Positions 1,709 through 64,000 of a stretch of DNA of 64,000 nt are shown in pieces. Under the pieces are notes generated by a model that did no database searches, had not been told where the DNA came from, and was given only the letters and a program-made list of their open reading frames with translations. The stretch comes from Macrostomum lignano (Eukaryota), in the NCBI GenBank assembly GCA_002269645.1, contig NIVC01000952.1, positions 400,967 to 464,966 on the forward strand, written 5' to 3'. Within the stretch, counting starts at the first letter, position 1; each line of letters opens with the position of its first letter. Position numbers and translations under genes: made by a program.

Positions 1709-3115
1709 ATGCAGCACCTCCTGTGCAACTGGATTTTTCAGACATCTAACCGCAGATGCGTGGCCGCGCTCGCTGTGCTGCTCAGTCTAAGCCTCTTTTA
1801 CATCGGAATCGAACCCTGGATACGAACTCAAACTGTATTATTTGATACAGAGGTAGTCGATGCGCCAAGCAGAAACACTGAGGTCTCAGACGAGCCAGCT
1901 CGCATGACTTCACAGAGCGCGCAGACTCCGAAGACAGGCCACAAGACGGACTCGCAGACTCCGAAGACAGGCCACAAGACGGACTCGCAGACTCCGAAGA
2001 CAGGCCACAAGACGGACTCGCAGACTCCGAAGACAGGCCACAAGACGGACTCGCAGACTCCGAAGCCGTTGCAGAAGTCCAGCGCAATGGAGGAATCAAA
2101 AGAAAAACAAAAAGGCTTCAGCTCCTTGCCTGTTGACTCGAGAGCTCTAAAGAAAAACTTCCCGAAGCTGAAAGAGGCTGCTAAGAAGCACAGCGGCAGG
2201 TACCACAGCCGACTGGACCAGATGATGGCCACCTACCTGCCAGCTGTCGACACCAGCGCATGGTCTCCGCACAGTCCCAGCGGCAAGAAGCTCACCATTG
2301 AGGAGGTCCATTCCGTGGCGAAGTCGACCATTCAGCCTGGATTCCAGGTGCCAAACATTGCTCACTTTGTCATGCCGTTCGGCGAAACCAACCTGCAGTT
2401 CCACCAGATGGTCAGCCTTCTCAGCTGTCTGCACATAATGAAGCCTCACCGTCTGCTGCTGTGGTACGCTCCTGGCAAGCTGCCAAGCGGACATTGGTGG
2501 GACAGAGTCAGGAAGAATCTGACCGAGTCGGAGTGGGAAGAGAAGATCATATTCGTGCAGAGACCGATTCCCACATCCGTGTACTCGGTTCCAGTTCACG
2601 GAAAAGAGCACCAGTCAGATGTGATGAGGCTTGAAGCTGTGCTCGTATTCGGAGGACTGTACATGGACATCGATGTCCTGGTTCTGAAACCGCTGGAGCC
2701 TCTTCGGAAATTCGTTTGCACCATTGGCAGGGAGGTTCCATACGGTCTGTGCAACGGCGTCTTCTTGTCCGCTCCTAGCGGGACGTTTCTGGCGATGTGG
2801 CACACGGCGTACCAGGTGTTCAACGATGAGGCTTGGGGCGAGCACTCAGTGAAGCTTCCGCACTCGATGCAAGCCGCCTTCCCGGACCTGTGCCACGTGG
2901 AAGAGGAAAGCATGGACCGGCCGAACTGGACTCCGAAGGAGAGGACCTGGATCTACAATATCGGACAGCAGAGCAGGTGGGATTGGAGGACTAAGAACTA
3001 CGTCATGCACCTGTGGTTTCGCCTGTACAATAAGCAGCACAGCATGGACAGCATACGAACGCTGGACTCAATGTACGGTGAGATGTGCCGTCGCATCTTG
3101 TACGGGAGCGGTTAG
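1709..3115 (+). CDS. Glycosyltransferase family 32 (DXD sugar-binding; alpha-1,4-GlcNAc/Gb3-synthase-like), type II Golgi membrane protein, single exon, 468 aa
   Basis: N-terminal anchor (CVAALAVLLSLSLFYIGI), low-complexity stem, VPNIAHFV, SDVMRLEAVLVFGGLYMDIDV (DXD), LCNGVFLS and YVMHLW motifs typical of GT32. Confidence 0.9.
   Translation: MQHLLCNWIFQTSNRRCVAALAVLLSLSLFYIGIEPWIRTQTVLFDTEVVDAPSRNTEVSDEPARMTSQSAQTPKTGHKTDSQTPKTGHKTDSQTPKTGHKTDSQTPKTGHKTDSQTPKPLQKSSAMEESKEKQKGFSSLPVDSRALKKNFPKLKEAAKKHSGRYHSRLDQMMATYLPAVDTSAWSPHSPSGKKLTIEEVHSVAKSTIQPGFQVPNIAHFVMPFGETNLQFHQMVSLLSCLHIMKPHRLLLWYAPGKLPSGHWWDRVRKNLTESEWEEKIIFVQRPIPTSVYSVPVHGKEHQSDVMRLEAVLVFGGLYMDIDVLVLKPLEPLRKFVCTIGREVPYGLCNGVFLSAPSGTFLAMWHTAYQVFNDEAWGEHSVKLPHSMQAAFPDLCHVEEESMDRPNWTPKERTWIYNIGQQSRWDWRTKNYVMHLWFRLYNKQHSMDSIRTLDSMYGEMCRRILYGSG
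1921..2065 (+). repeat. 33-bp coding tandem repeat (SQTPKTGHKTD) x4 plus partial, in the glycosyltransferase stem
   Basis: gcagactccgaagacaggccacaagacggactc repeated perfectly and in frame. Confidence 0.95.
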
Positions 3116-24900: not shown

Positions 24901-27094
24901 AGGGAGTGCAGAGTCAGGGATTGCAGAGTCAGGGAGTGCAGATTAAATATGCTGAGTTCCCCACTGACCTCAACGCTGGCCACCAGGCCTCCAGCGCTAA
25001 CATCCTCATCGTCCACCTCATCATCGATGACGTCATCATCGTCCTCATCTTCATCGGAGCTCAGGTCCTCGCTGAGTTCCTCCTCGTCTTCGTCCTCATC
25101 GTCATCCTCGTCGCTGGTGTCGGGGGCCGCCCGGAACCGGCGGCAGACGAAGTCCAGAGGCGAGTCAGCAGCGGAGGCAACCAGATCGCCGCCCGAGCCG
25201 TCCAGAGCTGCCGCCTCTTCGAGCTGGGCGAGCAGGTCCTGCAGGCAGCAGTCCGAAGCCAGGCTGAGCGAGTCCGGCGACTCCGGCCTGCCGCTGTCCA
25301 CCAAAGCGGTGGAAGCGCCGGCTGCTGTCGCCGTCGCGTCGACCTCCTCGACATCCTCCGACAAGTCGGTGGCGGGCATGGCGGTGCCGTCCAGCAGCAG
25401 CCGGGGATAATCCACATCCGGGTGCGCGGCCCCATCAGCAGTCTGTGGCAGCAGCGGGTCGAACTCCGCCGGCTTCGCCGCATCCTCAGCTGCCGCCTGA
25501 TCGCTGGAAGTCGTACAGAAGTCTGCTGTTGCTGAAGCATCTCCGTTCTCTTTGGGTGTCGCCTCGGAGTTCGTTGAAGCAGCGGCAGCAGTAGTATCTA
25601 GCGAGTTTTCCTCCATTTTAGTAGCCATTTTGCAGTCGCCAAGAGAGGCGGTCAGAATGTCCGCAGTGGAGGCTGGGGCAGTGGAATACGCGGCGGCGGA
25701 CTCGTCCGTTTTCGGATCGGCCGCCAAGCGGTCCAAAGCGGCCAGGGCGGACACAGCGGCCGCCCCAGAGCCAGCGGCCTCGTCACTGCTCGGGTTCGAA
25801 TCCGATGTAGCGGTGGCCCCGTCAGCCGACCCGGAGGCAGCCAGCGAAGGCGAGGGCTCGAAGCCGAGCGCCAGGGCGGCCTCGTGCTCCGCCCAGCCGT
25901 GATTCTTCTGAAAGGTGAACCCGTCAACTTCTTCGCCGCGCAGAGACCTGCCGACATTCCTGATGAAGGTGGCCTGGTCAAGGCCGGACTCGAAGTAGCT
26001 GGACACCGGGTCGGAGATGTTGGGGTGGTACAGTAGAAACAGCAGGCCCTGCAGGCAGTCCTCGATGCCGAAGGTTCGATTCCATTCATCGAATAGGTTG
26101 AGGCAGATGTTGTGCTCCAAGGTGAGGTCGGCATCGATGTTGGGGTGGTAAATGTCCGTCAGGCAGACCACGTCAGGCGCAGAGTCGGGATACTGCTCCG
26201 AGGCGTGAATCTGCGGGCGGGCAGCGGCAGGGCTTGGGCGTCACTTCTTGCGGGGTTCGGGGCGCACCGAAATGGGGCTTCAGCGTGCCGATGTGGGATC
26301 TCAGGGGGTTTTCAAGGTGCCGATGTGGGATCTCAGGAGGTGTTCAAGGTGCCGATGTGGGATCTCAGGGGAGTCTTTAGGGTTCCGATGTGGGATCTCA
26401 GGGGAGTCTTTAGGGTCCCGATGTGGGATCTCAGGGGGTCTTCAGGGTTCCAATGTGGGATCTCTGAGTGTCTTCAAGGTGCCGATGTGGGATCTCAGAG
26501 TATCTTCAGGGTACCAATGTGGGATCTCAGGGTGTATTCAGGGGCCGATGTGAGATCTCAGGGTGTCTTCAGGGTTCCGATGTGGGATCTCAGGGGGGGG
26601 GGCTTCAGGGTGCCGATGTGGGATCTCAGAGTGTCTTCAGGGTGCAGATATGGGATCTCAGAGTGTCTTCAGATTGCCGATATGGGATCTCAGGGTGTCT
26701 TCAGGGTGCTGATGTGGGATCTCAGGGTGTCAACAGGGCTAAGCTTTTAAGCTTAAATTAAGATATGTGCCACACTGGGTCTTCAGTAATGCCCAGAAAT
26801 CATAAGGTATTATTTGGACGTCAAGAAAAAAGGGGCCGCTGCACATGAAACTCATCGCTAAAAATCTTATTGTGGGCAGTTCAAAATACCACATGCCATT
26901 AACAGTGAATGCGGCTTTACCCATACCTGGAATAAGAATTTGCCATGCTTGTAGGGCCCATTGTTAGGCGCCAGTTCAACAATAAAGCAGTTCAGGTTGT
27001 CGGCATCATAGTCCCGGATGCTGGCCTGTCCACTGAATTTCTTGTCTATTGACTTGATCAGCCTGTTGAATTCTTTCACAAACCTGGAGGACAT
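21962..27094 (-). CDS. Ubiquitin-conjugating (E2) family protein, Ubc12/UBE2M-like core plus long acidic low-complexity tail. 4 exons (26927-27094, 24969-26210, 24127-24354, 21962-22195), ~623 aa
   Basis: GPYKHGKFLFQI, YPDSAPDV, YHPNID...NICLNLFDEW (catalytic Cys), LYHPNISDP and FIRNVGRSLRG. All introns are phase 0 with GT/AG ends. The last two exons are assigned by splice sites and phase only. Confidence 0.85.
22250..24030. repeat. ~22-bp minisatellite, ~1.8 kb, last intron of the E2 gene
   Basis: ggggatttccatagttgggata units, decaying at the right end. Confidence 0.95.
24420..24942. repeat. 15-bp minisatellite, E2 intron 2
   Basis: ggg(a/g)gtgcagagtca units. Confidence 0.95.
26275..26730. 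repeat. ~31-bp degenerate minisatellite, E2 intron 1
   Basis: ccgatgtgggatctcagggg(t)gtcttcagggt units. Confidence 0.9.
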
Positions 27095-38700: not shown

Positions 38701-41700
38701 ATAGAACTGTTAGACATGCCGGACACCTGTTAGACACAGCCTGGTCCCGTCGAACATCCGCAGGAAACTGCAGGCCTCCGCGCCCAGCTGCAGGCGCTCC
38801 GCCGCGAGCGTGATCACGTGACCTCGGAGCTGGCAACCGCGGCGGCCGAGCGCGACCGGATGAAGGCCTCGCTGCTGGGCATCGACAGCTCCGATTCGCG
38901 CAGTCCAGCCGAGGTCATGGCCGACGACCTTCGACAGGAGCTGCTGCTGGCCCGCCAGGAGGCCGACCGGCTGCAGGCGCGGTGCGCCGGCCTTGACGAG
39001 GAGCGTGCCGGGCTGCAGGAGGCGCACGACAGCCTGCTGGGCGAGCTGGGGGCGCTGCGCCGCGCCCTGGCCACCTTCCAGGAGACCGTGGCTGGCGAGA
39101 ACCGCGCCATCGAAGAGGAGAACCGGCGGCTTGCGCGCGAAAACGAGGAACTGAAGCGGGGGAAAAGCCGGCCAGCAGGCAGGTCGAGGAGCGGCGAGGA
39201 CGGCCTGGGAGAAAGCGATGAGGAGTGAGTTCGGGTCGGATGGGGTCAGACTGGCTCGAAGTAGGCTAGATTGGGTGAAGGAAGTGAGTCAGAATAGGTA
39301 ACGGCGAGTCGGGAAATATTAGAGTGAGTCATGCGCTTCACAGAATGTGTTAGACTATGATCAAAGTGAGTCAGAGTGCGTCAGAATGGGTCAGAGTGAG
39401 TCAGACTGGGTCAGAGTGAGTCAGACTGGGTCAGAGTGAGTCAGAATGGGTCATAGTGAGTCAGAATGGGTCATAGTGAGTCAGAATGGGTCATAGTGAG
39501 TCAGACTGGGTCAGAGTGAGTCAGGCTGGGTTAGAGTAAGTCAGCCTGGGTTAGAGTGAGTCAGAATGGGTCAGAGTGAGTCAGACTGGGTCAGAGTGAG
39601 TCAGACTGGTCATAGTGAACCGGACAATTCTTTCGCAGACTGGACAACCGCTTGCAAAGCCAGTTAGACGAGCTCCGACATCAGAACCGGCAGCTGGCCC
39701 AGGAGAATGAGCAGCTGAGCCGACCTGCTGCATCCGGCTACCGGCTGCCAAGTGAGTGCTGACCGCACCTTGTCAACCCCCTTGTGCACCTCCTGATATC
39801 CCGTTACATTCACTTTGCTTATTGAAGACTTGGGAGCTGCAGCCTCAGCCCCGGGCCTCAGCCGCGATCTGCAGGACGTCCAGACCAGGCTTGCGGAATC
39901 GCGCGACCTCCTGGGTCGTCAGCAGTCGCTCATCGACCAGCTGGAGGCCGGGTTCGATTCGCCTCCGCAGCAGCGGAAGCGACCATCGACAGCAGCCGGA
40001 ATCGGGACGGCGGCAGCGGCAGCCTCATCGGCGACGTCTCCGGAGGTAGCAGCGCTGCGGCAGGAGATCGGCCGCCTGCGCCAGCTGGCCACTGAGAGCC
40101 AGCAGCGACGGCCGGAGGTTGACGATCTTCTAAGGCGGCTGTTAGAGGACAGGTAAAAGTCACTTTAACTCATATTTTCCTCAAACGAGATCCCAATAAA
40201 GACTCCCAACTCTGCTCTCACCGACAGCCGCGGCAAAGACGAGGCGATTCGCGCCCTGTCCGCTCAAGTCGATGCTCTCAAAGCGTCAAGACACTCGCAG
40301 CAGCCGTCCGGTGCTGACGATGGGGTCAGCCAGGACGATGGTCTGAGGAATCGAGTCCGAGACCTGCTGACCGACTGGGGCCGCTTTCAAGGCGACCTGT
40401 CCGGCCAGTTGCGCGTCGAGTCGGATGACCGACGGCAGGCCATCCGCGAGCTGGACAGCCGCTTCCAGGCGCTCGCCAATGAGCTGGAGGCGCTGCGCCG
40501 GGGCCGCGGAAGCGCCAGAAACGCCCAGTCCCAGACCCAGACGCCTTGGTTGAGACGACCGCCCGATCCGCAGCAGCAGCAACAACAACAGCAACAACAA
40601 CAGCAACAACAACAGCAACAACAACAGCAACAACAACAGGCTTCGTCCAACGCGGTCTCTTCAGACGACGGCCTGCACGAACGGCGGCCGTCGTCAAAGA
40701 AGCCGACGCACCTTGGCGAGGCCAAAGCTCGCTCGGATTCTTTAAACTTGCATCGCCCGCCAGCTGAGCAGCCGCACGGCACGGCTGGCGGGCCAAGCGT
40801 TGCCAATAGCAACGCAAACACCGCAGCCGCAGCAGCTGCCAGCGACAGCACTAAAAATATCCACACGCAGACGTCTCCACCGCCCCAAGCCTGCCCCGAG
40901 CATTTTTTCAATAGTTTGCCTTACTTCGAAGGCCCCCGACTCTACGATGAGGTCTCCGATGCCGAGGGCCTGCTGAGCGACGGCAAAGGACGCCACACAA
41001 CGGTTGAAAGCGGCGCCTTTCATCAGCAGCCGCACCTGCAGGGGGAGCCGTCTGGCACATCGGAATCCGCTAATTTGAACCTGCGCTCAGGCCCGCAAGA
41101 CCAAGGCCGAGCTGATGGGCAGTGCAGCAGCATGTGGGCCAGGCTCAGGTCGGCGAATGCAGGAAACGAAGGCCCCACAGCGCAGTCGCAGCGACAGCGA
41201 GCCAAGAGACAGTCCAGACGGAGCTTCGCCAGCTCAGCCAGCCCATCGCTGCCGGGAAGTCCGCGCCAGTCCGGCCTTCGAGACTCAGCCGGGTTGCACA
41301 GTGAGCGGTCCTTGAGTGGCAGCCCAGCGCGGAGACCGTCGTCTCGTAGCAAAGCACCATGGGACCGTCACGAAGAACGCAACGATTCCGACGAGACTCT
41401 GTCTGGTTCACCGCGACGATCTCGACGCGACAGCGGAACTCGGCGGCGCAAAGTTCCAAAGCTGAACCTGGGCAGCGAGGTCGGGAGCCACGGGCGGCCT
41501 CTCAGCGCAGAAGAAGCAGAAAGTCGAAGCCGAGCAGAGCAGAGCCGGTTGGAGGCTTCAAAGGCTCCAGTTGACAACCTTGGCTTCCGCGTGCCCAGAG
41601 GCGAGGCTAGACATCCCAGCTTCGAATCCGACAGCGGCAAGAGCGCCCGGTTCTCGTCAGACAGACAGGCGCGCGAAAAGCAGCCACGCTCAAGTCTTCG

Positions 41701-44700
41701 AACCTACAGTCAGTCGGAAGCCAGCGTTGGCGAGTCCACCGGCACGGTGAGGCCCACAGAGGCCAATCGACAAGGCGAGTTGTCTAATGAGCCAGCCCCA
41801 GGACGCGGTGTGCGGAGACGCGAAGGTTCTGGATCCGACAGTGAGGAATCGAGAAGCTCCCGGAGACCGAGCGAACTTGGATACAATAGACGCCCTGATG
41901 ATGATGTTTTCAGTGACAGAGACAAAACCGGGAGCCCAGACAGGCATCCTGACAAACCTAGCCATGCGAATTCCAGCGACAGGACTCTAGATGCGCGGGA
42001 TTCCCAGTCAGCAAGTGCCAGGGACAAGACTCTGTATAAGCAGCGCAACGATTCTCATTCTCCCAGTAACAGGGATCAAAGTCAAGGTGAAAGATTTGTC
42101 GATTCTCAGCCAACGAGTGCCAGAGACAGAAGTTGGTATCAGCAATTCGACCAGCTTGGCAGGACCAATTCTCAGGCCGGCAGCAAAGATGGACGCCGCA
42201 CAGGGGAATTCGAAAATAAATCAAATGCTGCGATTAGTAGAGATGGATACCCGGATCAACGATATGACGGTATAGCAGTGAGTAACAGGGACAGAAGTCC
42301 AGACGGACGGTATGACGGCTCTCAGCCTCCCAGCACTAGAGACAGAAGCCGAGACAGACGATATGACGGGTCTCAACCTCCCAGCGCGAGAGACAGAAGC
42401 CGAGACAGACGGTATGGCGGCTCTCAGCCTCCCAGCACTAGAGACAGAAGCCGAGACAGACGATATGACGGGTCTCAGCCTCCCAGCGCGAGAGACAGAA
42501 GCCGAGACAGACGATATGACGGGTCTCAGCCTCCCAGCGCGAGAGACAGAAGCCGAGACAGACGGTATGGCGGCTCTCAGCCTCCCAGCACTAGAGACAG
42601 AAGCCGAGACAGACGATATGACGGGTCTCAGCCTCCCAGCGCGAGAGACAGAAGCCGAGACAGACGATATGACGGGTCTCAGCCTCCCAGCACTACAGAC
42701 AGAAGCCGAGACAGACGGTATGACGGCTCTCAGCATCCTTATGCGAGAGACGGAAGTCGAGACAGAAGCCGAGACAGACGTTATGACGGCTCTCAGCCTC
42801 CCAGTGCGAGAGACAGAAGCCGAGAGAGACACAAAGACGACTCTCATCCACCCAGTGCGAGAGACAGAAGCCGAGACAGACGTTATGACGGCTCTCAGCC
42901 TCCCAGTGCGAGAGACAAAAGCCGAGAGAGACGTTATGACGGCTCTCAGCCTCCCAGCGCGAGAGACAAAAGCCGAGAGAGACGTTATGACGGCTCTCAG
43001 CCTCCCAGCGCGAGAGACAGAAGCCGAGAGAGACACAAAGACGACTCTCATCCACCCAGTGCGAGAGACAGAAGCCGAGACAGACGTTATGACGGGTCTC
43101 AGCCTCCCAGCGCGAGAGACAGAAGCCGAGACAGACGGTATGGCGGGTCTCAGCCTCCCAGCACTACAGACAGAAGCCGAGACAGACGGTATGACGGCTC
43201 TCAGCATCCTTATGCGAGAGACGGAAGTCGAGACAGAAGCCGAGACAGACGATATGACGGCTCTCAACCTCCCAGTGCGAGAGACAGAAGCCGAGAGAGA
43301 CACAAAGACGACTCTCATCTACCCAGTGCGAGAGACAGAAGCCGAGACAGACGTTATGACGGCTCTCAGCCTCCCAGCGCGAGAGACAGAAGCCGAGACA
43401 GACGTTATGACGGCTCTCAGCCTCCCAGTGCGAGAGACAAAAGCCGAGAGAGACGTTATGACGGCTCTCAGCCTCCCAGCGCGAGAGACAAAAGCCGAGA
43501 GAGACGTTATGACGGCTCTCAGCCTCCCAGCGCAAGAGACAGAAGCCGAGACAGACGTTATGACGGCTCTCAGCCTCCCAGCGCGAGAGACAGAAGCCAA
43601 GAGAGACACAAAGACGACTCTCATCCACCCAGCGCGAGAGACAGAAGCCGAGACAGACGTTATGACGGCTCTCAGCCTCCCAGCGTGAGAGACAGAAGCC
43701 AAGAGAGAGACAAAGACGACTCTCATTCATTCAATAAGAGACACAAAAGCCAAGACAGAAGGTATGACGGCTCTCAGCCTTACAGCGTGAGAGACAGAAG
43801 CCTAGAAAGAGACAAAGACGACTCTCATCCATCCAATAAGAGAGATAGCAGCCGAGACAAACGGTATGACGCCTCTCAGCCTCCCAGCGCGAGAGACAGA
43901 AGCCGAGAGAGACAAAAAGACGCCTCTCAGCCTCCCAGCGCGAGAGACAGAAGCCGAGACAGACGATATGACGGGTCTCAGCCTCCCAGCGCAAGAGACA
44001 GAAGCCGAGAGAGACACAAAGACGACTCTCATCCACCCAGTGCGAGAGACAGAAGCCGAGAGAGACACAAAGACGACTCTCATCCACCCAGTGCGAGAGA
44101 CAGAAGTCGAGACAGACGATATGACGGGTCTCAGCCTCCCAGCCCGAGAGACAGAAGCCGAGACAGACGGTATGACGAGTCTCAGCCTCCCAGCACTACA
44201 GATAGAAGCCGAGACAGACGGTATGACGACTCTCATCCACCCAATAAGAGAGACAGAAGCCGAGACAGACTGTATGACGATTCTCAGCCTGTAAGTCTGA
44301 AAGACCGACCCCAAAATAAGCAACACAGTGAACTGAATTTTGCCAGCACAAAGGAGAAAAATAAAGACAGGCGGTACGACAGCCATCAGCCTCCCAGTGC
44401 GAGAGACAGAAGCCGAGAGAGAGACAAAGACGACTCTCATTCATCCAATAAGAGAGACAGAAGCCGAGACAGACGGTATGATGATGCTCAACCTCCCAAT
44501 GCGAGAGACAGAAGCCGAGACAGACGGTATGATGATGCTCAACCTCCCAATGCGAGAGACAGAAGCCGAGACACACGGTATGACGGCTCCCAGCCTCCCA
44601 GTGCGAGAGACAGAAAACGAGAGAAGCAGAAAGATGACTCTCATCCAACCAGTGTGAGAGACAGAAGTAAAGACGGACAGAAAGACGACTCTCATCCTCC

Positions 44701-47700
44701 CAATGCAAGAGACAAACGGTACAACGGTTCTGAGGATGAAAACAAAGGAGGTCGAGATGGACGATTAGACAAAAATAGAAAAAGCGATTTTCATGATGCG
44801 AGTTTCACGCACAGATCGAAAGACAAACATGATAGCGAATCTTGCAATGCTGGCGCCAAAGACAGAAGGTACGATGACTCACAGCTAACGAATTCTGGAG
44901 TCAAAGAAAGTCTCGACGGTGAATCTCATCCTACCAGTGCCAGAGACAAAAGTCGAAACAGACGGCACGGTGATACTCATGCTGTACTTGACAGTGACGG
45001 AGATGTAGACAATCCTTTTAACAGAACTGGCAGGCACGATTCACAGGATTTGAGTACGAGAGAAAGACCCTGTGTTGGACTCAATGCCGAATTTTATTCC
45101 CAAAGCACAAACGACGGCGACGAACGGTACAACGATTCTCAGCGTGTGCGTGGGAAACACAGGTTTAAGCCGGAATCGGAAGGTGAATCTCAGAGTAAAA
45201 GTGCAAAAGACGGAAGTGAAGATCTGCGAAATGACGACTCTCTCGCGGTCAGTGCCAGAGATCAAAGCCGCGACCGATGGTGCGACGACTCTCATCCTGC
45301 CAGTGCGAGAGACAGAAGTGAAGAAAGACGATACGACCCTCGACCTGTGGGCGAAATAGACGGACAGAGGGAAAAACTGGACGGATCTTTTGATTCGAGT
45401 GACAGAGACAGAAGTCAAGACAAACGGAACGAAGACTCTCATTCTTCCAGTTCCAGAGACAGGCGCCAGAGACAGGAGACAGGAGAAACGTCCGTACCTC
45501 GCTATACAAACGATGCTAAACAGCCTGCTGAGATGAGCCCAGGCGATTGGCGCAAAGGACAAGTTAAGCTTGACGCAAAGCCTGAAGCCGGCCATCAACC
45601 CAAGGACCAGTCAGTATCAGTGAGTCCTCGGCACCAGAGCAAGCCAAGTGGACAGAGTCTAAACGAAGCCGATAAGCCAGCTGCCGAAGTGGAATTCAAG
45701 TCTGGTGAAACGAATTCTCGGCTAGAAAGTCCCATTGCGCGACGTGACTCTACGAGGCAAGTCGACGCAAAGTCGCCAAGCCGCAGACGAGACACCAGTC
45801 GAGACAGTGATGGTCGGAGAAGCAGAAATGAAAAAATATCTGGAAAGTACTCTGGGCCTGTCAGCGCTAGCAGGCAGTTTGAAGGTGGGCATGAGAGTGA
45901 CATTGATAGAAGCGCCAGATACAGAGATGGAAGATCCACTCCAGATCTTGGCTTGCAAAGAACACCTCGAGGCAAACAACCTGGCAGTTCGGTAACAGAA
46001 GCTGGTGAACGGAAACCTCCGGGTGAACAGCCAAGTGCAGACAACAGAAGCGGGCAGAGCGGAACCGATTCGGACATTGATGCTGGCCAGAAACAAAAAT
46101 CTAGGCGCTCTTCGACAGCTTCTCCAGCAGGTTCTCACCCCGACAAACAGGGACAATTACAAAGCAGTGATCCATCAAGGAGCCGAACACGCGACTCTGA
46201 CGGAGATCGCTCCGAAAAGTCATCGAAGACAGCCAGAGCGGACAGTTTTGCGACGAAAGCAGCATCCACTAGCGACGGACAGCAAAGGAAGGGAAATTTG
46301 AAGTCCACGTCTGGTAAATTATCTAATGAAAGTTCCGCGAAGGATGATGGCCCAAGTATGGCAACTGCGTCCTTGAGTGCCGAAGTCGATCCCAGCAGTT
46401 CAACGTCGAAGCCGGCGCGAAGTCGGTCCGGCGGTTCCGTCAGTCCAGCCCGAAGAACTCGCTGGGAGGACGAGGAGCAGCTGAAAGCAGAGCGAGGCGA
46501 AGTGCCTGAAGACGCAGTTATCGCAGCGAGTCGAGACGATCTCAACGTCGGTGCTAGTGAACATCGACCTGATTTCACTCATCGATCTGACGCTGTTGAC
46601 TCGAGAAAACGTCCAGATTCAGGTGGAAAGACTGGTCTACGCAGCTTAGCTGACAGTGATCAGAGAGATTTTAGTAGCGATGCGGATGGTGATGCAGTCC
46701 ACGGTCAAGACCGTCCAAGTAGTAGAGGACGCGAAACAATGGCGAACTCAGAGAAGCTCAAAACATCCACAGAGGAATTGAACGACGCAATTCAACACGC
46801 GGATGCCATGGTTCGCAGGCATGGAGGTCGTGATGGAGGGACTGACAATTCATTGACGAAAGCAGATTTGAACCAATTAGGATCGAACTCAACTACATTC
46901 TCTGACGCTGAGACGTCCCCGAGAAGCAGTGCAGCCGACTCTGAGATGGCCAGCAAAATTTTAGGCAAAAGCATTGCTGGCGAGAACTCAGAAAAGCCCC
47001 AAAGTGATCCAAAAAAGCATAACAAAGGCCTAAGTGATCAAGACCCCGAAAGTCCCAGCGAGGCGTCCACTGTGCGTGGGGAACAAGCGCAACTCAGTGC
47101 TTTTGATTCGCCTTTGCAAGCCGTTTCGAACACGGGAAGAACCAGGAGGGACACGCAATTGGAGGACGATGATTCGAATTCACCAAGCATAAAAGGTCAA
47201 ACCGTGGATCGAGACCGCACAAGTGCTGGAGAAAGTTCAGCTGGGCTACGAAGTGACTCACCTGATCAGTCTGAAAGATCTGACAGCGCTGTTGAGAGGA
47301 GATTGAGCCCGACAGAAAGCTGGCAGAAATCTGCCAGATTGTCAACGGCAAGCGGAAAATCTCTTGATGACGCTGAAGTCTGCGATGGAGGTCAACAAAA
47401 TAAAGCCGAAAAGACAATGCTTGATGACGAGCTCGGAGTGTTGAAGTTAGTTGATTCAAAACCCGGATTTGATGGCCAACTGGATCCAACAAAGCGGGCG
47501 CAAATCCATGGCCAGAATGCGGGAACTGCGGGTTCTGAACCGGATACACTATTGGGGAAAACTGGTAAAGACGGGGCTCAACTACCAGGTGATAAGCAAC
47601 GAGTTGAAAGTACCACGGAATCGCATGCGCGAGATGAACGAAGATCAAGTGAATCAAGCGCATCGGATGCTGAAGTTGCTCGTCACGCTGCTGAAGACTC

Positions 47701-50700
47701 CAAGCAGAAGCCGCTGATTCGCTTGGAAGAGCCAACGGATTCCGCATCGTCGGGCGGTGATGCGCATCGCGGGAAGCCGAGTGGCGTTGGAGAAGGCTCA
47801 TCGAAGCAGCACGAGAACCGGCGCACACCTGAGCATGGCTGGAAAGAAGGCAGGAAGTCAGAGATGGAGCCTGACAATTATAAAAACGATTCTAATAAAG
47901 AAGAGAAAGACACCCGAGGCGGCGGCGAAAAGGGTAAATTTTCAGCGCAAGGAAAAATCAGTTCAAACGAAGAAACTTCCAGTGAGTCGATGCCGGATGC
48001 AGACACTAGCAGAGAGGGCAGGCCAGTGCGATCTCAGCCAGACTCCAAGGCTGCTCTGAACTCAGACAACCTCGCGACCTTTGCGAATAAACTCGACCAG
48101 ACGACCATCAAAGAGGCTCAACAGAGTCTGGAGCACCGGGTGCCAGTGACAGCGGTCAGTTGCGTCAGACAGCCCGACTTGGCGACAGCAGGCTCAATCA
48201 GCCAGGTGGAATTGACAGCAATAGAAGTCTAGACGATCAAATAGCACTATAATACCAGAGAGTAGAGTCGAAAGTTTACAGCAGATGGCTGCTGTTTTAG
48301 ATAAGGCAGCTTCTGGGCGAGCAAACCTGAAGCAAAGTGGTCCAACAGGACTGATGCCTCAAGAAGACAGATCTCCAGAGCTGCCAATTAGAGATAGCGG
48401 TGCTATTCGCGTTGAAGGAGAAACTTATTTTACTGATCAGTCCAGAACCGTCGTATCGCCAAGATCTCCATCCGGGCAGTCGGTTGGCGGGGAGTTCGGC
48501 ACTCATGCAGGATCGGGCATTCCCGTGCCGGTGAGGCGCCTGCAGCCTCGGTCTTCTAGCGCAGGACGAACCGAGCAGGAGCAGCCGCCCCCACAGCAGC
48601 CCGTCTCGCTAGCGTCTCCTCCAGTTCGCGGAACAAGTCCGTTTTCGACTGGCTCTGAACAATTTTTCTCTGGCTCAAAGATTCCAACGCGACTGAAATT
48701 CGAGCAAAAGAGCTCTTCAAAAGACAGTTACAGCAAAGACGCAACTGACGGAGTAGACCATTCCCAGAATAAAGCGGGAGATGATGCAGTAAATTCAGTC
48801 ACGACGGTAAGCTCAGCTGCAACTGTTCAAGGAGAGTTCGTTCAGGAAGATACTTGCATTAAAACCCGGATAAGCCAGCCTCCTGAAGAGTCGCTTAACT
48901 TTAGCATCGAGTTGGCGCCAGAGCAACGAGTTCGCACAGAGGTCCTGGGAGCCCAGGGCGATGCAAAGTCGTCAGAGAACACGCAAATACAATCGGCAAG
49001 ACAACAAGCGCTTGAACTTGGGCTTCGGGGCCAACAAAAACTCCTGCAAGGAACCGATGCGAGCGACAGTGCCAACAGGCCCCAAAGTCAATCTGCTGAT
49101 AATTCTTCCTCAGAAAATACATCCGAAGATAAATTCGACCGCCCACCTTCCTGGACTATAAAAGATCCCAGTGGAACATCATCCGGCAGGTCGGACGACT
49201 CTCCCAATGCCGATAGGAGCGACAGTCGAAGGCTACCCGGAGCTGGCAGGGACCAAATGAGCCAGAAGTTGGCCCAAGCAGACACCGATGCGATAGGTCA
49301 TGCAACACAACAGGAAATGTCAAAGAATTTTGATTCGCAACCTGTTGAAAGCAAGCAGAAAATTCCAAGCTCGGCTCATGGATCACAGCAAAAAAGCCCG
49401 AGCGAGAGTTACTTGCATCCGGACAATGCAGGAAATTTGGAAGAACCCGAGTACTCGGACAGCTTCACTGAGGACGTCTCCAATGACCGGACCGCCTCGG
49501 GGACTCACGACTCGGGCAAGAAGTCCAGCGAGTCCGGCCCGGATTCGATTCGGCACCGCCAGGAGTCCGCGGCAGAGAACACATTCCAACCGGCTGTGGC
49601 CGGCCAGAAGCCTGCAAATTTTTCCAGGAATCTCGACGCTGATGGAGAGCTAAGCCAGGCAGGCGGACGATCGGAGAGCAGCTTCGAGGCTGATGTGGAG
49701 CTATCGGATCCCAGCGCAGCCGGAGAGCACGCGGGTTCGTCGCTGTCTAGGCAGGAGCTGAAGGGCTCCCAGGGCTCCGGCAGGCAACCGCAGCAGCAGA
49801 GGACGCAGCAGCAGCATCCGGTTTACAGCAGCAGCCTCAGCAGCTCGGGCACTGTTAGTCCTAATGAAGTACTCAATGTGAAGCGCTCAACAGGTGAGAA
49901 ATTTATTAATGCGTGAAATGAAAAGGCATGCACTACCTACGCGTGCTTTCAAGCTCAGGCTGTCTCGTAAACGCAGCTGAAAAGTTTAAACTGTTCGGGC
50001 ACGACGGACCCATGGGTAGGACCCATAATCATATAAACCCTCAAGGCGTCGTCAGGAAGTATATGTGGGTTGGGGTTGAACGAACTGTCTCTGAGCTGAC
50101 AGCCACCCTCCTTTATGCAAAGACGATAAATATTTTATTTCTTATTTCAATGTTTTAAGAACGACCAACACAGCCGGGCAGCGCGTCGGCCGCAAGAGGG
50201 CCGGGCAAGGTGCGCGCTCGCAGCAGCTCCGAGTCGGAGATTTCCCAGCAGCACGAGCCGATCTTTGTTCGCATCGCAGTCAACGATCGGCGCAAACGCG
50301 ATGGCGTCCAGCTGTGTCGCAGCGTACCGAACCTCAGCAGCGTCAGCGGAGGCGGCGAAGACCTCGGCAGCCGGCAGCTGGAGCAGCTTGCACCACAACC
50401 GATGTCGCCTCCGACAGGAAGTCGCGACGCTTCCGATGCAACTTCCATGCTGACGCAGTCGGCGCCTCCAATCATGAACCCGGACATGCAGCAGCAGCGT
50501 CTGCTCCAGCAGGACCTGCGGAACACGCTGTCCGATTTGGACGACGAAGAGTTTGAAGCTTTTGTCACCGGCGTGGATCAGATCGTCAGCCAGATTCGAG
50601 CCGAGGCTGAGGAACCTAACGAGCAGCTGGAGCTGCCCGCGATCGATACTCGACTCCCTGATCCGGGCAGCAACCGCCTGTACTCCTCCGACTCCGAGGC

Positions 50701-58498: not shown

Positions 58499-60900
58499 CC
58501 AGCAACTGAGGATCTGGGAGGCTGGCTCAGCAACTGAGGATCTGGGAGGCTGGCCCGGCAACTGAGGATCTGGGAGGCTGACCCAGCAACTGAGGATCTG
58601 GGAGGCTGGCCCGGCAACTGAGGATCTGGGAGGCTGACCCAGCAACTGAGGATCTGGGAGGCTGGCCCGGCAACTGAGGATCTGGGAGGCTGGCTCAGCA
58701 ACTGAGGATCGGGAGGCTGTAGCAGCAACTGAGGATCTGGGAGGCTGGCCCAGCAACTGAGGATCTGGGAGGCTGGCCCAGCAACTGAGGATCTGGGAGG
58801 CTGGCTCAGCAACTGAGGATCTGGGAGGCTGGCCCAGAAACTGGGGATTGGGAGGCTGTCCAGCAACTGGGGATCTGGGAGGCTGGCTCAGCAACTGAGG
58901 ATCTGGGAGGCTGGCCCAGCAACTGACACTCTGGGAGGCTGGCCCAGCAACTGAGGATCTGGGAGGCTGGTACAGAAACTGAGGATCTGGGAGGGTAGTC
59001 CAACAACAACTGAGGATCTGGGAGGCTGGCCCAGCAACTGTGGATCTGGGAGGCTGGCCCGAGCAACTGAAGATCTGGGAGGCTAGTCCAACAACTGAGG
59101 ATCTGGGAGGCTGGCATAGCAACTGAGGATCTGGGAGACTGGCCCAGAAACTGAGGATCGGGAGGCTGTCCCAGCAACTGGGGATCGGGAGGCTGGCTCA
59201 GCAACTGGGGATTGGGAGGCTGTCCAAGCAACTGGGGATCTGGGAGGCTGGCCTAGCAACTGAGGATCTGGGAGGCTGGCCCAGCAACTGACACTCTGGG
59301 AGGCTGGCCCAGCAACTGAGGATCTGGGAGGCTGGTACAGCAACTGAGGATCTGGGAGGCTGGCCCAGCAACTGACACTCTGGGAGGCTGGCCCAGCAAC
59401 TGACACTCTGGGAGGCTGGCCCAGCAACTGAGGATCTGGGAGGCTGGCCCAGCAACTGAGGATCTGGGAGACTGGCCCAGCAACTGGGGATCTGGGAGGC
59501 TGGCTCAGCAACTGAGGATCTGGGAGACTGGCCCAGAAACTGAGGATCGGGAGGCTGTCCCAGCAACTGGGGATCGGGAGGCTGGCTCAGCAACTGGGGA
59601 TTGGGAGGCTGTCCAAGCAACTGGGGATCTGGGAGGCTGGCCTAGCAACTGAGGATCTGGGAGGCTGGCCCAGCAACTGACACTCTGGGAGGCTGGCCCA
59701 GCAACTGAGGATCTGGGAGGCTGGTACAGCAACTGAGGATCTGGGAGGCTGGCCCAGCAACTGACACTCTGGGAGGCTGGCCCAGCAACTGACACTCTGG
59801 GAGGCTGGCCCAGCAACTGAGGATCTGGGAGGCTGGCCCAGCAACTGAGGATCTGGGAGACTGGCCCAGCAACTGGGGATCTGGGAGGCTGGCCCAGCAA
59901 CGTACTGGGGATCTGGGAGGCTGGCCCAGCAACTGAGGATCTGGGAGGCTGGCCCAGTAACTGAGGATCTGGGAGACTGGCCCAGCAACTGGGGATTGGG
60001 AGGCTGTCCCAGCAACTGGGGATCTGGGAGGCTGGCTCAGCAACTGAGGATCTGGGAGGCTGGCCCAGCAACTGAGGATCTGGGAGGCTGGCCCAGCAAC
60101 TGAGGATCTGGGAGGCTGGCCCAGCCACTGAGGATCTGGGAGGCTGGACCAGCAACTGAGGATCTGGGAGGCTGGCCCAGCAACTGAGGATCTGGGAGGC
60201 TGGCCCAGCAACTGGGGATCTGGGAGGCTGGCCCAGCAACGTACTGGGGATCTGGGAGGCTGGCCCAGCAACGTACTGGGGATCTGGGAGGCTGGCCCAG
60301 CAACGTACTGGGGATCTGGGAGGCTGGCCCAGCAACTCAGGATCTGGGAGGCTGGCTCAGCAACTGGGGATCTGGGAGGCTGGCCCAGCAACGTACTGGG
60401 GATCTGGGAGGCTGGCCCAGCAACTCAGGATCTGGGAGGCTGGCTCAGCAACTGGGGATCTGGGAGGCTGGCCCAGCAACTGACACTCTGGGAGGCTGGC
60501 CCAGCAACTGAGGATCTGGGAGGCTGGCCCAGCAACTGAGGATCTGGGAGACTGGCCCAGCAACTGGGGATCTGGGAGGCTGGCCCAGCAACGTACTGGG
60601 GATCTGGGAGGCTGGCCCAGCAACTGAGGATCTGGGAGGCTGGCTCAGCAACTGAGGATCTGGGAGGCTGGCTCAGCAACTGGGGATCTGGGAGGCTGGC
60701 CCAGCAACTCAGGATCTGGGAGGCTGGCCCAGCAACGTACTGGGGATCTGGGAGGCTGGCCCAGCAACTCAGGATCTGGGAGGCTGGCTCAGCAACTGGG
60801 GATCTGGGAGGCTGGCCCAGCAGCTCAGGATCTGGGAGGCTGGCTCAGCAACTGGGGATCTGGGAGGCTGGCCCAGCAACTGAGGATCTGGGAAGCTGGC
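58499..60900. repeat. 28-bp minisatellite, ~85 copies, with higher-order structure
   Basis: cagcaactgaggatctgggaggctggcc units with diagnostic variants. Confidence 0.97.
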
Positions 60901-60902
60901 AC

Positions 60903-61065
60903 CCAAAAAGAACTGCTTGGCGCATCCAGAAAAGCTCCAAGATTCCTGGACTTGTCCAGTGCAGCCAGGAAGGGCTTGACAACCAGATTCTCTCTCCCCA
61001 TTGCCTGAATGAATTTCAGCACGGTTATCAGAGAATCTTCATCTTGCTGCACAGCAGCGCACGCA
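60903..61065 (-). CDS. Candidate upstream exon of the membrane-protein gene
   Basis: CCATCTTCAG acceptor, open frame ACAAVQQDEDSLITVLKFIQAMGRENLVVKPFLAALDKSRNLGAFLDAPSSSFW, and a phase-0 GT donor compatible with the 55373 exon. Confidence 0.4.
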
Positions 61066-61365: not shown

Positions 61366-61648
<283 letters not shown>

Positions 61649-61786
61649 TTTGATAATGAATGAACCAGAAAAATCAGTTGGTAATTTCATCAGCTTTGCC
61701 TACTACAGTTTTAAAGCAAGTTAGCTAGGTGAATTGAGGCATTTATTAGTGCAATCTGAGCGGCGAAACTGTCCCCAATCAGTCCG

Positions 61787-63509
61787 TCACTGGCGCAGTC
61801 TGAGGGTGCTGTAGTCGGCATTGAGGGCATCCAGCGGCTCGCTCACTGCCACGGTGTACATCGGCTCGCTGTCGGGAAATTTCAGCGTCTCCAGGACGCC
61901 ACGACAACTCGGCGCGCTGTCGGCCGCGCGAACCGCGAACGGGTACACCGGCGCGAGCTTCTCGCAGCCTATCGTCTCGGGGGCCAACGGGGCTTCCAGC
62001 TGGTGCGAATAGGCGAGGCTCCGGCAGCTGGCCGAGGCCTCTGCGGCGAGGGCCAAAAAGCCCAGCGCGTCCCTGGGCGAGTCCACCCAGCGGCCCATGA
62101 AGGGCCGCTTGTGCGGCGGCAGCGTCAGCTCCAGCGGGTAGAGGCGCACCCCGCTGGTCTCTCCGGCCTGGCTCACCTGCACATGGCCAGCCTGCAGGCT
62201 GTAAAAGGACAGCTCGATGAAGGGCCAGCAGCCGCGCTGGACCCACCGAAAGCAGACAGACTGGCTCCACACTCTCCAGCTGCCTGCCTGAGTCAGGCGC
62301 AGGTCCGCGTGTCTGGTCAAAATTTGAGCAGTCTTTAGATTACATTGTGCAGTGTTCAGGTCTTCCCCAGTGACTCCACTCCACTCACTCTCCAGTGACT
62401 CCACTCACTCTCCAGTGATCCTCCACTCACTCTCCAGTGACTCCACTCACTCTCCAGTGACTCCACTCACTCTCCAGTGAGTCCACTCACTCTCCAGTGA
62501 CTCCACTCACTCTCCAGTGACTCCACTCACTCTCCAGTGACTCCACTCACTCTCCAGTGACTCCACTCACTCTCCAGTGACTCCACTTACTCTCCAGTGA
62601 CTCCACTCACTCTCCAGTGACTCCACTCACTCTACAGTGACTCCACTCACTCTCCAGTGACTCCACTCGCTCCCCAGTGTCTCTCCCTGTGTCTTTTGTC
62701 ATCTTGTCACTCCCAAGTGTCGATTGTCACTCCCGAGTATCTTTTGTCACTCCCGGTGTCTCTTGTCACTCCCCAATGACAAGAGAATTCCACTCACTCC
62801 CCAATGACTCCACTCACTCCCCAGTCTAACCAATTCCCAGTGACTCTTGTCGCTTTCTAGTGTCTCTCTTGTCACCTATTTCTTGTCTCCATTCACTTCT
62901 TGTCACTCGTCAGTGTCTCTTGTCACTTCCCAGTATGTTACATTCCCCAGTCGAGCACGCAATGCGTGTGAAACCAGAGAACACTATCCAGAGTGAGTTC
63001 AATATTTTGACATGCAAAACCGGGCTCCCAGGGCCTTGATCGCAATCCGGAAATTCTTACCCAGCCAGTGCGTCGGCCAGCTTGCCCTGGTCGGCCCCCT
63101 TCATCAGCAGGCTGACGCTGTCGTCCCACGGAACCACACCGTGGTGTCGGTAGGAGCCCAGCAGAGAGTTGCCGTACAGCAGGGCAGGCAGGCCGCGCTG
63201 CTCGCAGAGGTCCAAGAAGGTCCACAGCAGGCGCAGGATGGCCCGCAGCTCAGTTGCGGTGATCTGCGGCCCGAACAAATCGGTGCGGAATGGCGCCCTC
63301 GTGCTGAGCAGCCGGATGTAGAACTCAACGCTTGGCAGCTTCTGCGCTGGCGTTGCATTCAATGCTGCGGCCTTGGGGTACCCGCGACAACTGCCCGGAC
63401 TGCGGAGCCAGAGGAGGCAGATCTTTGCGCTGACTATGCAGAGGGCGGTCAGCAGCACACACCGAGCGATCTTCTTGGGTGTGAAGCGTCGAAGCAAGTA
63501 GGTCAGCAT
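61787..63509 (-). CDS. LicD/fukutin-FKRP family type II membrane protein, 2 exons (63061-63509, 61787-62312), ~324 aa; probably catalytically degenerate
   Basis: TM anchor CVLLTALCIVSAKICLLWL and LicD signature LYGNSLLGSYRHHGVVPWDD. Exon 2 has WPFIELSFY, RPFMG, C.S..YSH.LE and CEKLAPVYPF. Phase-2 GTAAGA/CAG intron and AATAAA on the minus strand at 61747-61742. An alternative ATG lies at 63536. Confidence 0.88.
62365..62680. repeat. 20-bp minisatellite in the LicD intron, followed by decayed tgtcactccc repeats
   Basis: ctccactcactctccagtga units. Confidence 0.95.
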
Positions 63510-64000
63510 TGCAAATCGATCGGGTCCAATCTGCATTCATTTAATAGAATGTGTTTCGAATAGCGTGAGTACTGACGAGTACTATATATTCCCGGTTGGG
63601 AGAGGAATAAAGACCCTGGTGCCCATCTACCATAGACGGGCAAAATTATTTGTTCTTATTATAGTGTATTTATTCTCATCTTGATCGGCTCAATTACCAA
63701 CCGTGATTGATTGACTGACAAAAGCAATACTTACATGTAGTATTGGTTTTTGCATGCTAAGTGAGTCATTTTTCAAGCAATCTGAGACTGAATAGCAAAA
63801 ACAATATTGTCTATGGCCACCCCTCGCTGCAGCCCAGCTTTTTGGGATCGCCTTGCAAGCAAAGTGAGAATTTTTAAAAAGCTAAGTGAGAACCATATTG
63901 AAAACAAAGGCTGGGCTATGGCAAATCAACTGCGTCTAACAAGCAACGAGGATAGAGAGCGCCTGGTCAATGCCGTCGAAGATGGTTACTCATTTTCGAT

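What the first reader, a model, noticed from the sequence alone, without database searches (positions are those of the whole stretch)
63100..63185. LicD/FKRP-family protein lacking its metal-binding aspartates (candidate pseudo-enzyme)
Seen: the signature reads GNSLLGSYRHHGVVPWDDSVSL (TGG GAC GAC AGC GTC AGC). Established: the family has PWD-x-D-x-D (FKRP WDYDVD, where the last two Asp bind metal). Both positions are Ser here. The later strand reads WPFIELSF where an Asp is expected (alignment inferred). The ORF, anchor and cysteines are intact. Inference: a conserved non-catalytic or rewired Golgi partner in phospho-glycan synthesis.
Basis: partly seen in the sequence, partly recalled or inferred. 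Interest (0 to 1): 0.7.

Follow-up and report, generated by a model that had tools for sequence, protein, structure and literature searches.

The report
Flatworm LicD paralog with dead active site
A flatworm (Macrostomum lignano) copy of a phospho-sugar-transferring enzyme family has lost the acidic residues that do the chemistry, yet it is still kept intact by selection, so it is probably a non-catalytic "pseudo-enzyme"; this is a modest, lineage-specific curiosity.

Summary
On the minus strand a two-exon gene (63509..63061 and 62312..61787; 324 aa from M10) encodes a type II membrane LicD/FKTN/FKRP-family protein of Macrostomum lignano (BOX15_Mlig019709g2). It reads PWDDSVSL and WPFIELSF. 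Three M. lignano paralogs and about 98% of 144 other family representatives read PWDDDxD and WP(F/Y)xD. Aligned to FKRP, Ser140 and Ser142 replace Asp362 and Asp364, and Glu192 replaces Asp416; each of these was shown essential by mutagenesis. Asp360's equivalent is kept. An independent genomic copy carries the same codons, so this is not a sequencing error. The ORF, the splice sites (intron position shared with paralogs), the membrane anchor and the conserved Cys, His, Pro and Arg residues are intact. A branch codon model gives omega of 0.2-0.4 and rejects omega = 1. The best reading is a catalytically dead paralog kept for a non-catalytic role. Not shown: expression, orthologs outside M. lignano, Golgi location, or any partner. 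A recently relaxed duplicate and a rewired enzyme remain possible. Interest is modest.

The parts
63061..63509 (-). Coding exon 1, from M10 (ATG 63509-63507) to the donor GG|GTAAGA. An upstream in-frame ATG at 63536 would add 9 residues in this copy only.
   Evidence: In the L001 copy, codon 4 of the longer ORF is TGA, so M10 is the start shared by both copies, as in NCBI model P0001.
62313..63060 (-). Intron of 748 nt (GT..AG, phase 2), containing a 20-bp minisatellite of 15 copies at 62378-62683.
   Evidence: P0004 and P0006 have an intron at the same position and phase.
61787..62312 (-). Coding exon 2, including the TGA stop at 61789-61787.
   Evidence: The C-terminus aligns end to end with P0004.
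63405..63461 (-). Signal-anchor (transmembrane) helix CVLLTALCIVSAKICLLWL, preceded by the basic tail RRFTPKKIAR. This gives a type II topology.
   Evidence: The AlphaFold2 model has a helix at residues 11-35 in M10 numbering; the sequence is.
63165..63173 (-). G122-N123-S124, a degenerate NTase hG[GS] motif. Position 123 is Gly in 99% of the family.
   Evidence: GGT/GGA changed to AAC. It aligns with FKRP G344-G345-S346.
63111..63128 (-). W137-D138-D139-S140-V141-S142, the family's WDDDxD motif with both canonical NTase carboxylates replaced by Ser.
62273..62275 (-). R172 (AGA), where 98% of the family has Lys.
62213..62215 (-). E192 (GAG), in place of the third catalytic Asp (the FKRP Asp416 equivalent).
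61742..61747 (-). AATAAA poly(A) signal, 40 nt after the stop codon.
   Evidence: This is a sequence feature only; its use has not been shown.
63583..63588 (-). TATATA element, about 75-80 nt upstream of M10. It is a possible core promoter.
   Evidence: This is a sequence feature only.

Best explanation
The gene encodes a type II membrane protein with a LicD/FKTN/FKRP nucleotidyltransferase fold. It is one of at least five Macrostomum lignano paralogs, and its two-metal catalytic centre has been dismantled. Both carboxylates of the DxD pair are Ser, the third is Glu, and the Gly of the hG[GS] nucleotide-phosphate motif is Asn. In this family the CDP-donor phosphate is held and activated through those metals. 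The protein therefore most likely can no longer transfer a phospho-alcohol from a CDP-donor.

The rest of the fold is kept under purifying selection, so the protein is probably retained for a non-catalytic job in the secretory pathway. My preferred guess is binding, escorting or regulating an active paralog such as P0004, P0005 or P0006, or binding the same acceptor glycan.

Shown: family membership by descent and fold, the residue changes, the intact gene in two independent copies, and omega below 1. Inferred: loss of activity, from FKRP mutagenesis and the general NTase mechanism. Guessed: the partner or regulator role and the Golgi location.
For: - Motif changes against paralogs and 144 other family representatives.
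- FKRP correspondence. Asp360, Asp362, Asp364 and Asp416 are each essential and organise two Mg2+ ions (PMC6965139). LicD enzymes need Mg or Mn and share DDDxD (PMC11982090).
- Confident AlphaFold2 model (pLDDT 88, pTM 0.81); the best PDB matches are FKRP and then ANT(2'')-Ia.
- An independent copy has the same codons and only one coding difference in 972 nt, against 13 in 746 nt of intron (Fisher p = 1.5e-4).
- The intron position is shared with the paralogs.
- Branch codon model: omega on the window branch is 0.20, 0.27 or 0.41 depending on the codon-frequency model. Omega = 1 is rejected with 2dlnL of 21, 17 or 12.
- 24 of 31 near-invariant family residues are kept. The non-active-site losses are conservative (K>R, F>L, V>A), whereas the active-site ones are radical.
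- The catalytic codons changed by two or three nucleotides each.
- A fully neutral branch would leave the ORF open with probability of only about 0.015.
- Canonical, presumably active paralogs exist in the same genome.
Against: - There is no expression evidence.
- No ortholog was found in another species, so long-term conservation of the dead state is not shown.
- Omega is averaged over the whole branch since duplication, so a recent switch to neutrality would be invisible.
- Omega on this branch is about twice that of P0004, and 7 of 31 invariant residues are lost against 0-4 in the paralogs.
- The two copies are too alike for a dN/dS estimate: 1 non-synonymous and 0 synonymous differences.
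- The enrichment of changes at variable columns is only marginal (p = 0.07).
- The D>S, L>V, D>S cluster (7 of 9 nt) could be one complex mutational event, which weakens the argument that many steps imply a long time.
- D138, D139 and E192 remain and might still hold one metal.
- I had no model coordinates with which to inspect the site.
Confidence: 0.6

Rival explanations
1. A redundant duplicate on its way to becoming a pseudogene. Catalysis was lost fairly recently in a genome rich in duplicates, and the ORF simply has not been hit yet.
For: No ortholog was found outside M. lignano and there is no expression evidence. Seven of 31 family-invariant residues are lost, more than in any paralog. 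Omega is about twice that of P0004. A short neutral period would leave the ORF open with appreciable probability, for example 0.72 after 10 substitutions and 0.52 after 20. UniProt model P0003 may reflect a damaged third copy.
Against: Omega = 1 over the branch is rejected. Two diverged copies both keep the ORF, the splice sites and the same residues, and the coding sequence is far more similar between them than the intron is. Four separate active-site positions changed, mostly by multi-nucleotide steps. Losses outside the active site are conservative. Exon GC (0.64-0.68) is still sharply distinct from the intron (0.50) and the flanks (0.31-0.41).
Confidence: 0.2
2. A rewired but still active enzyme. 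D138, D139 and E192, perhaps with the two Ser, would form an altered metal site or a metal-independent site, giving either the same phosphotransfer or a new reaction such as hydrolysis of a phosphodiester.
For: Three acidic residues remain at or next to the site, including the equivalent of FKRP Asp360, which is itself essential. Asp to Glu at position 192 is conservative. Purifying selection is about as strong as in the paralogs under some models; the one-ratio model is not rejected. Two other family lineages show a different non-canonical motif, WEDxxE, while keeping the third Asp.
Against: FKRP mutants at Asp362 and at Asp364 are each inactive. The two positions are Asp in about 98% of 144 family representatives. 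The hG[GS] Gly is lost as well. From my own knowledge, I know of no NTase-fold transferase that works without the strand-2 carboxylate pair.
Confidence: 0.12
3. A sequencing, assembly or gene-model artefact.
For: The window lies in a repeat-rich region, and one database model (P0003) is clearly chimeric.
Against: The same codons occur in an independent assembly copy that differs elsewhere and in three database models. The changes are multi-nucleotide, in-frame substitutions. No alternative canonical exon exists in the window.
Confidence: 0.01

Closest known systems
M. lignano paralog BOX15_Mlig027643g3 (P0004), together with P0005 and P0006: LicD/FKTN/FKRP nucleotidyltransferase domain proteins
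   Same: 49-52% identity over the full length. Same type II layout, same intron position and phase, and the same conserved Cys, His, Arg and Pro residues and C-terminal tail. They form one clade with 100% bootstrap support.
   Different: The paralogs keep YGG(T)LLG, PWDDDxD, K172 and WPFID. The window gene has N123, S140, S142, R172 and E192.
Human fukutin-related protein FKRP (PDB 6KAJ and related entries), a CDP-ribitol:ribitol-phosphate transferase
   Same: The NTase-fold catalytic domain is the best structural match (E = 5e-8) and the only significant PDB sequence match. The hG[GS], WDxDxD and third-Asp strands align residue for residue.
   Different: Identity is only 22-25%. The structural match covers only the FKRP catalytic domain, not its N-terminal stem domain. 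The catalytic Asp362, Asp364 and Asp416 equivalents are Ser, Ser and Glu. It is not an ortholog.
Bacterial LicD and Mycoplasma mf1 phosphorylcholine transferases (PF04991)
   Same: The Pfam LicD match is above the gathering threshold. The DDDxD region is the family hallmark, and activity depends on a divalent metal.
   Different: Only the first 49 of 227 profile positions match. The last two Asp of DDDxD are missing. The animal subfamily also has a Cys-containing C-terminal module that the Pfam profile does not cover.
Pseudo-enzyme paralogs of glycan-building enzymes and NTase-fold pseudo-enzymes (Cosmc, the T-synthase chaperone; MiD51)
   Same: These are functional analogies recalled from my own knowledge. 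Each is a paralog that kept the fold, lost the metal or catalytic motif, and works by binding. MiD51 appears among the weak NTase-fold matches.
   Different: No homology with Cosmc, and only remote fold similarity to MiD51. No binding or chaperone activity has been tested for the flatworm protein.

Membership tests
LicD/FKTN/FKRP protein family (Pfam PF04991; NTase group XXIII of Kuchta et al. 2009): membership by descent | Significant sequence match to the family profile and to bona fide members | tested here: met
   PF04991 scores 28.2 bits against a cut-off of 22.6. E = 1.8e-91 to P0004. 1885 relatives were found in the representative search. FKRP is the only significant PDB sequence hit.
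LicD/FKTN/FKRP protein family: membership by descent | Nucleotidyltransferase fold | tested here: met
   AlphaFold2 pLDDT 88 and pTM 0.81. Foldseek top hits are FKRP (probability 1.0, E = 5e-8) and then ANT(2'')-Ia.
LicD/FKTN/FKRP as active CDP-alcohol phosphotransferases | Two carboxylates on strand 2 (DxD; FKRP Asp362 and Asp364) | tested here: not met
   Ser140 and Ser142. The FKRP equivalents are essential.
LicD/FKTN/FKRP as active CDP-alcohol phosphotransferases | Third carboxylate on the neighbouring strand (FKRP Asp416) | tested here: inconclusive
   Glu192 is acidic but one methylene longer. 149 of 153 aligned sequences have Asp here.
LicD/FKTN/FKRP as active CDP-alcohol phosphotransferases | hG[GS] motif | tested here: not met
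   G122-N123-S124. Position 123 is Gly in 99% of the family and aligns with FKRP Gly345.
LicD/FKTN/FKRP as active CDP-alcohol phosphotransferases | Metal-dependent transfer from a CDP-donor | not testable with these tools
   This needs a recombinant protein assay.
FKRP or FKTN orthologs (dystroglycan ribitol-phosphate transferases) | Orthology: closest to FKRP or FKTN, with the FKRP stem domain | tested here: not met
   Identity is 22-25% and limited to the catalytic domain. The nearest relatives are uncharacterised lophotrochozoan LicD-domain proteins. The gene sits in a M. lignano-specific clade.
Pseudo-enzyme | Homolog of active enzymes that lacks the catalytic residues | tested here: met
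Pseudo-enzyme | Maintained by selection (not a decaying pseudogene) | tested here: inconclusive
   Omega of 0.2-0.4 rejects omega = 1 over the whole branch, and the ORF is intact in two copies. However, the time of catalytic loss is unknown, and there is no cross-species ortholog or expression evidence.
Pseudo-enzyme | Experimentally inactive, with a demonstrated non-catalytic function | not testable with these tools

The most novel reading that the evidence does not exclude
The Ser-x-Ser plus Glu site is not dead but rewired. In this reading, a LicD-fold protein works without the canonical strand-2 carboxylate pair. It could use D138, D139 and E192 with Ser hydroxyls for a different metal geometry or a new reaction on phospho-glycans, such as removing or editing a phosphodiester rather than adding one. 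That would be a new catalytic solution within the nucleotidyltransferase fold.
Probability: 0.08. Interest if true: 0.75.

Novelty: new variant of a known kind. Interest (0 to 1): 0.33.

Why it matters
The searchable literature describes no inactive member of the LicD/fukutin/FKRP family. The animal non-FKTN/FKRP branch of the family is uncharacterised, although it is the obvious candidate for adding phosphorylcholine-type groups to invertebrate glycans. A naturally dead paralog sitting beside active ones, in a flatworm where RNAi and transgenesis are available, would be a convenient handle. It could show whether these enzymes work in complexes, as FKRP does as an oligomer, and which residues serve binding rather than catalysis. 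Pseudo-enzyme paralogs are common in enzyme families, however, and this one is so far confined to a single species, so the broader significance is limited.

Tried and rejected
1. dN/dS between the window copy and the independent L001 copy was uninformative: 1 non-synonymous and 0 synonymous differences. Synonymous sites are also less diverged than the repeat-rich intron, so the contrast between coding sequence and intron is only weak evidence of protein-level constraint.

2. I first read a strong acceleration of the window lineage from Tajima tests with P0005 or P0006 as outgroup (47-49 against 14-17 unique changes). That reading needs the window gene and P0004 to be sisters, which has only 61% bootstrap support. 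With the undisputed outgroup P0008 the asymmetry is not significant (23 against 16), and the protein is no faster than P0005 or P0006. I dropped the claim of acceleration.

3. The codon-model run using codon frequencies from the window gene alone gave a degenerate, saturated fit and was ignored.

4. The argument that multi-step codon changes imply an ancient loss is weakened, because 7 of 9 adjacent bases changed together (GAT CTG GAC to AGC GTC AGC). This could be one complex event.

5. I looked for an alternative exon encoding a canonical DxD in the window and found none.

6. No orthologs in other species turned up in either large protein search.

7. The gene identifier appears in no searchable paper.

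9. I had no access to the model's coordinates, so I could not check in 3-D whether other acidic residues could rebuild the metal site.

Full report
WHAT IS THERE

The finding lies in the first coding exon of a two-exon gene on the minus strand, near the right end of the window. Translating the minus strand gives an ORF from 63536 (or, better, from M10 at 63509) down to a consensus donor GG|GTAAGA at 63061/63060. A 748-nt intron full of minisatellite follows. The acceptor is TTGACCAG|A at 62313/62312, and a second exon runs to TGA at 61789-61787. The join is in phase and gives 333 aa from the first ATG, or 324 aa from M10. Residue numbers below count from the first ATG; subtract 9 for M10 numbering.

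The protein is 100% identical over its length to NCBI model BOX15_Mlig019709g2 of the free-living flatworm Macrostomum lignano. UniProt names it 'LicD family protein'.

In an independent genomic copy (NIVC01000180.1, locus L001), the fourth codon of the longer ORF is TGA. The start codon shared by both copies is therefore M10. An AATAAA lies 40 nt after the stop, and a TATATA lies about 75-80 nt before M10. These are sequence features only.

Codons 63128..63111 read TGG GAC GAC AGC GTC AGC (W137 D138 D139 S140 V141 S142). The later strand reads WPFIELSF, with E192 = GAG at 62215-62213.

Three M. lignano paralogs (P0004, P0005, P0006; 41-52% identical) read PWDDDLDM, PWDDDLDL and PWDDDFDV at the first site, and CWPFIDLSF, CWPFIDVAF and CWPFIDVAF at the second.

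I aligned the query with 152 proteins from an exhaustive search of 1.84 billion representatives: the best 150 hits plus two further database models of this gene. Positions 140, 142 and 192 are Asp in 147, 147 and 149 sequences. Only this gene's own copies are Ser/Ser/Glu.

The only solved structure with significant sequence similarity is human FKRP. The profile alignment and the direct alignment both place PWDDSVSL on FKRP PWDYDVDL, and the FID/FIE strand on FKRP HVD(416)L.

The FKRP structure paper states the following. Asp362, Asp364 and Asp416 are the three conserved NTase carboxylates. They organise two Mg2+ ions. Each is essential by mutagenesis, and Asp360 is also essential (PMC6965139). 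Its alignment of the later strand, which it marked as inferred, is confirmed.

Two things were missed. First, the first two Asp of the family's WDDDxD, including the Asp360 equivalent, are retained. In addition, K172 (98% Lys) is Arg.

IT IS NOT AN ERROR

The L001 copy differs from the window by 1.7% in the intron (plus 148 gapped columns of repeat) and by 5% in the 5' flank. It carries the same Ser, Ser, Glu and Asn codons. The changes are in-frame, multi-nucleotide substitutions: GAT to AGC, GAC to AGC, GGT/GGA to AAC and GAC to GAG. No alternative exon with a canonical motif exists in the window.

FAMILY AND FOLD

Pfam LicD (PF04991) matches above its gathering score, but only over the first 49 profile positions. 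An AlphaFold2 model built on 42 aligned homologs is confident (pLDDT 88, pTM 0.81). It has an N-terminal transmembrane helix, a disordered stem and a mixed alpha/beta domain. Foldseek against the PDB returns the FKRP catalytic domain (probability 1.0, E = 5e-8) and then the aminoglycoside nucleotidyltransferase ANT(2'')-Ia. This is the same pair of relatives discussed for FKRP itself.

The nearest non-Macrostomum relatives are uncharacterised 'LicD/FKTN/FKRP nucleotidyltransferase domain' proteins of an annelid, molluscs, a nemertean and a fluke, at 39% identity or less. The gene is not an FKRP or FKTN ortholog.

A neighbour-joining tree puts the M. lignano paralogs in one clade. Support is 100% for the four closest and 93% with P0008 added. 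The window gene is sister to P0004 with weak support (61%). This is therefore a lineage-specific expansion. A fluke genome paper reports a mean of 2.3 LicD genes per flatworm species, with lineage-specific expansions, and no functional data. Phosphorylcholine on a cestode glycoprotein is documented in the literature (PMC3316857). Little is known about the enzymes that transfer such groups to glycoconjugates.

IS IT STILL UNDER SELECTION?

Several lines of evidence bear on this.

(a) The ORF, both splice sites, the intron position and phase (shared with P0004 and P0006), the membrane anchor and the family's invariant Cys255 and Cys275 are all intact.

(b) Of 31 columns that are at least 90% conserved in the wider family, the protein keeps 24. 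The paralogs keep 27-31. Of the seven losses, four are in the catalytic motifs (G123N, D140S, D142S, D192E). The others are conservative (K172R, F223L, V285A).

(c) Consider columns where the three canonical paralogs agree. Family-conserved non-active-site columns changed in 3 of 24 cases, against 26 of 81 at variable columns. This is the direction constraint predicts, but it is only marginal (Fisher p = 0.07).

(d) I recovered the coding sequences of P0004 and P0006 from their genomic loci and fitted my own GY94 branch model on the three-taxon tree. Omega on the window branch is 0.20 with pooled F3x4 frequencies, 0.27 with paralog frequencies and 0.41 with equal frequencies. Omega = 1 is rejected each time (2dlnL = 21.2, 17.0 and 12.1). 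Omega is consistently about twice that of the P0004 branch, but a single-omega model is not rejected. Synonymous sites are near saturation, and the window gene has a shifted composition (GC3 0.84 against 0.57-0.64). These numbers are therefore rough, but the rejection of neutrality is robust to the frequency model.

(e) If all 154 lineage-specific nucleotide changes had been neutral, the ORF would remain open with a probability of about 0.015, indels ignored.

(f) Between the two copies, the coding sequence shows 1 difference in 972 nt against 13 in 746 nt in the intron (p = 1.5e-4). Synonymous sites are equally quiet and the intron is repetitive, so I count this as weak evidence.

Together these results say the gene has not been drifting for long. 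They cannot date the catalytic loss within the branch.

HOW IT MOST LIKELY WORKS

In NTase-fold transferases, the strand-2 carboxylate pair and the third carboxylate hold the two metals. Those metals bind the donor phosphates and activate the acceptor. In FKRP the donor's alpha-phosphate contacts the site I metal. With both pair members replaced by Ser and the hG[GS] Gly replaced by Asn, canonical donor activation should fail. This is an inference from FKRP mutagenesis and from family-wide invariance, not a measurement.

The fold is conserved and canonical paralogs exist in the same genome. I therefore favour a non-catalytic role in the secretory pathway: binding or escorting an active paralog, or binding the acceptor. 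This is the pattern seen for other dead paralogs of glycan-building enzymes; the analogy comes from my own knowledge.

Type II topology (basic tail, a single N-terminal helix, a luminal domain with an NAT sequon) fits the ER or Golgi, but localisation is untested.

RIVALS

A recently relaxed duplicate heading for pseudogenisation remains possible (about 0.2). A rewired enzyme that uses D138, D139, E192 and the serines is less likely but not excluded (about 0.1). An artefact is effectively excluded.

COMPARISON AND NOVELTY

By descent and fold the protein belongs to the LicD/FKTN/FKRP family. By catalytic signature it fails two of the defining features (DxD and hG[GS]) and is equivocal on the third. 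It should therefore not be annotated as a transferase.

I found no description of an inactive member of this family in the searchable literature. The NTase superfamily as a whole has known inactive members.

It is a new variant of a known kind. The finding is real and cleanly documented. However, it is confined so far to one species, has no expression or functional data, and is of a type (a dead paralog) that is common in enzyme families. I score interest at about 0.33.

Noticed in passing
window 61367-61648; 62378-62683; 58499-60900: Three large tandem arrays surround the gene. A perfect (AGAT)x70 microsatellite begins about 140 nt after the stop codon. A 20-bp minisatellite of 15 copies lies inside the intron. 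A 28-bp minisatellite of 85 copies lies further downstream. The intron array differs in length between the window and the L001 copy (148 gapped columns).
   Followed up: partly
window 63527 (codon 4 of the long ORF) compared with L001: In the independent copy this codon is TGA. The 9-residue N-terminal extension in the window copy (MQIGPDRFA) is therefore probably 5' UTR or a copy-specific extension, and M10 is the start codon shared by both copies.
   Followed up: yes
window 60915-61064 (-) and 61790-62335 (-); protein P0003: UniProt model A0A1I8F5G7, named 'Gamma-glutamylcyclotransferase', fuses exon 2 of this gene to a downstream ORF. It reads APLREARAPVYPF where the window has APLAPETIGCEKLAPVYPF, which loses the invariant Cys275. 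This is either a gene-model or assembly artefact, or a damaged third copy.
   Followed up: partly
window 61787-63509 (coding exons) compared with the intron and flanks: The exons are strikingly GC-rich (0.64-0.68; GC3 0.84), compared with the intron (0.50), the flanks (0.31-0.41) and the paralogs' GC3 (0.57-0.64). The cause was not examined; candidates are codon bias, biased gene conversion or regional composition.
   Followed up: partly
L004 3001-3933 (P0195, cluster representative P0140) and L005 393-1379 (P0065): Two other full-length family members, from unplaced metagenome contigs, carry a different non-canonical motif: PWEDFVEM or PWEDVVEM, and PWEDGAEL. They keep the third Asp. Departures from DDDxD have therefore arisen more than once in this animal subfamily.
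   Followed up: partly
window 1709-3115 (+): A 468-aa ORF matches Pfam PF04488 (glycosyltransferase sugar-binding region with DXD motif, E = 3e-7). It is another glycan-related gene, about 60 kb from the LicD paralog.
   Followed up: no
window 40409-48232 (+): An uninterrupted 2607-aa ORF has no Pfam match and lies in a region of strong AT skew. It is probably a repetitive or low-complexity coding or non-coding tract.
   Followed up: no
window 24204-26171 (-): A 655-aa ORF has a partial ubiquitin-conjugating enzyme (UQ_con) match at its N-terminus (E = 3e-7).
   Followed up: no
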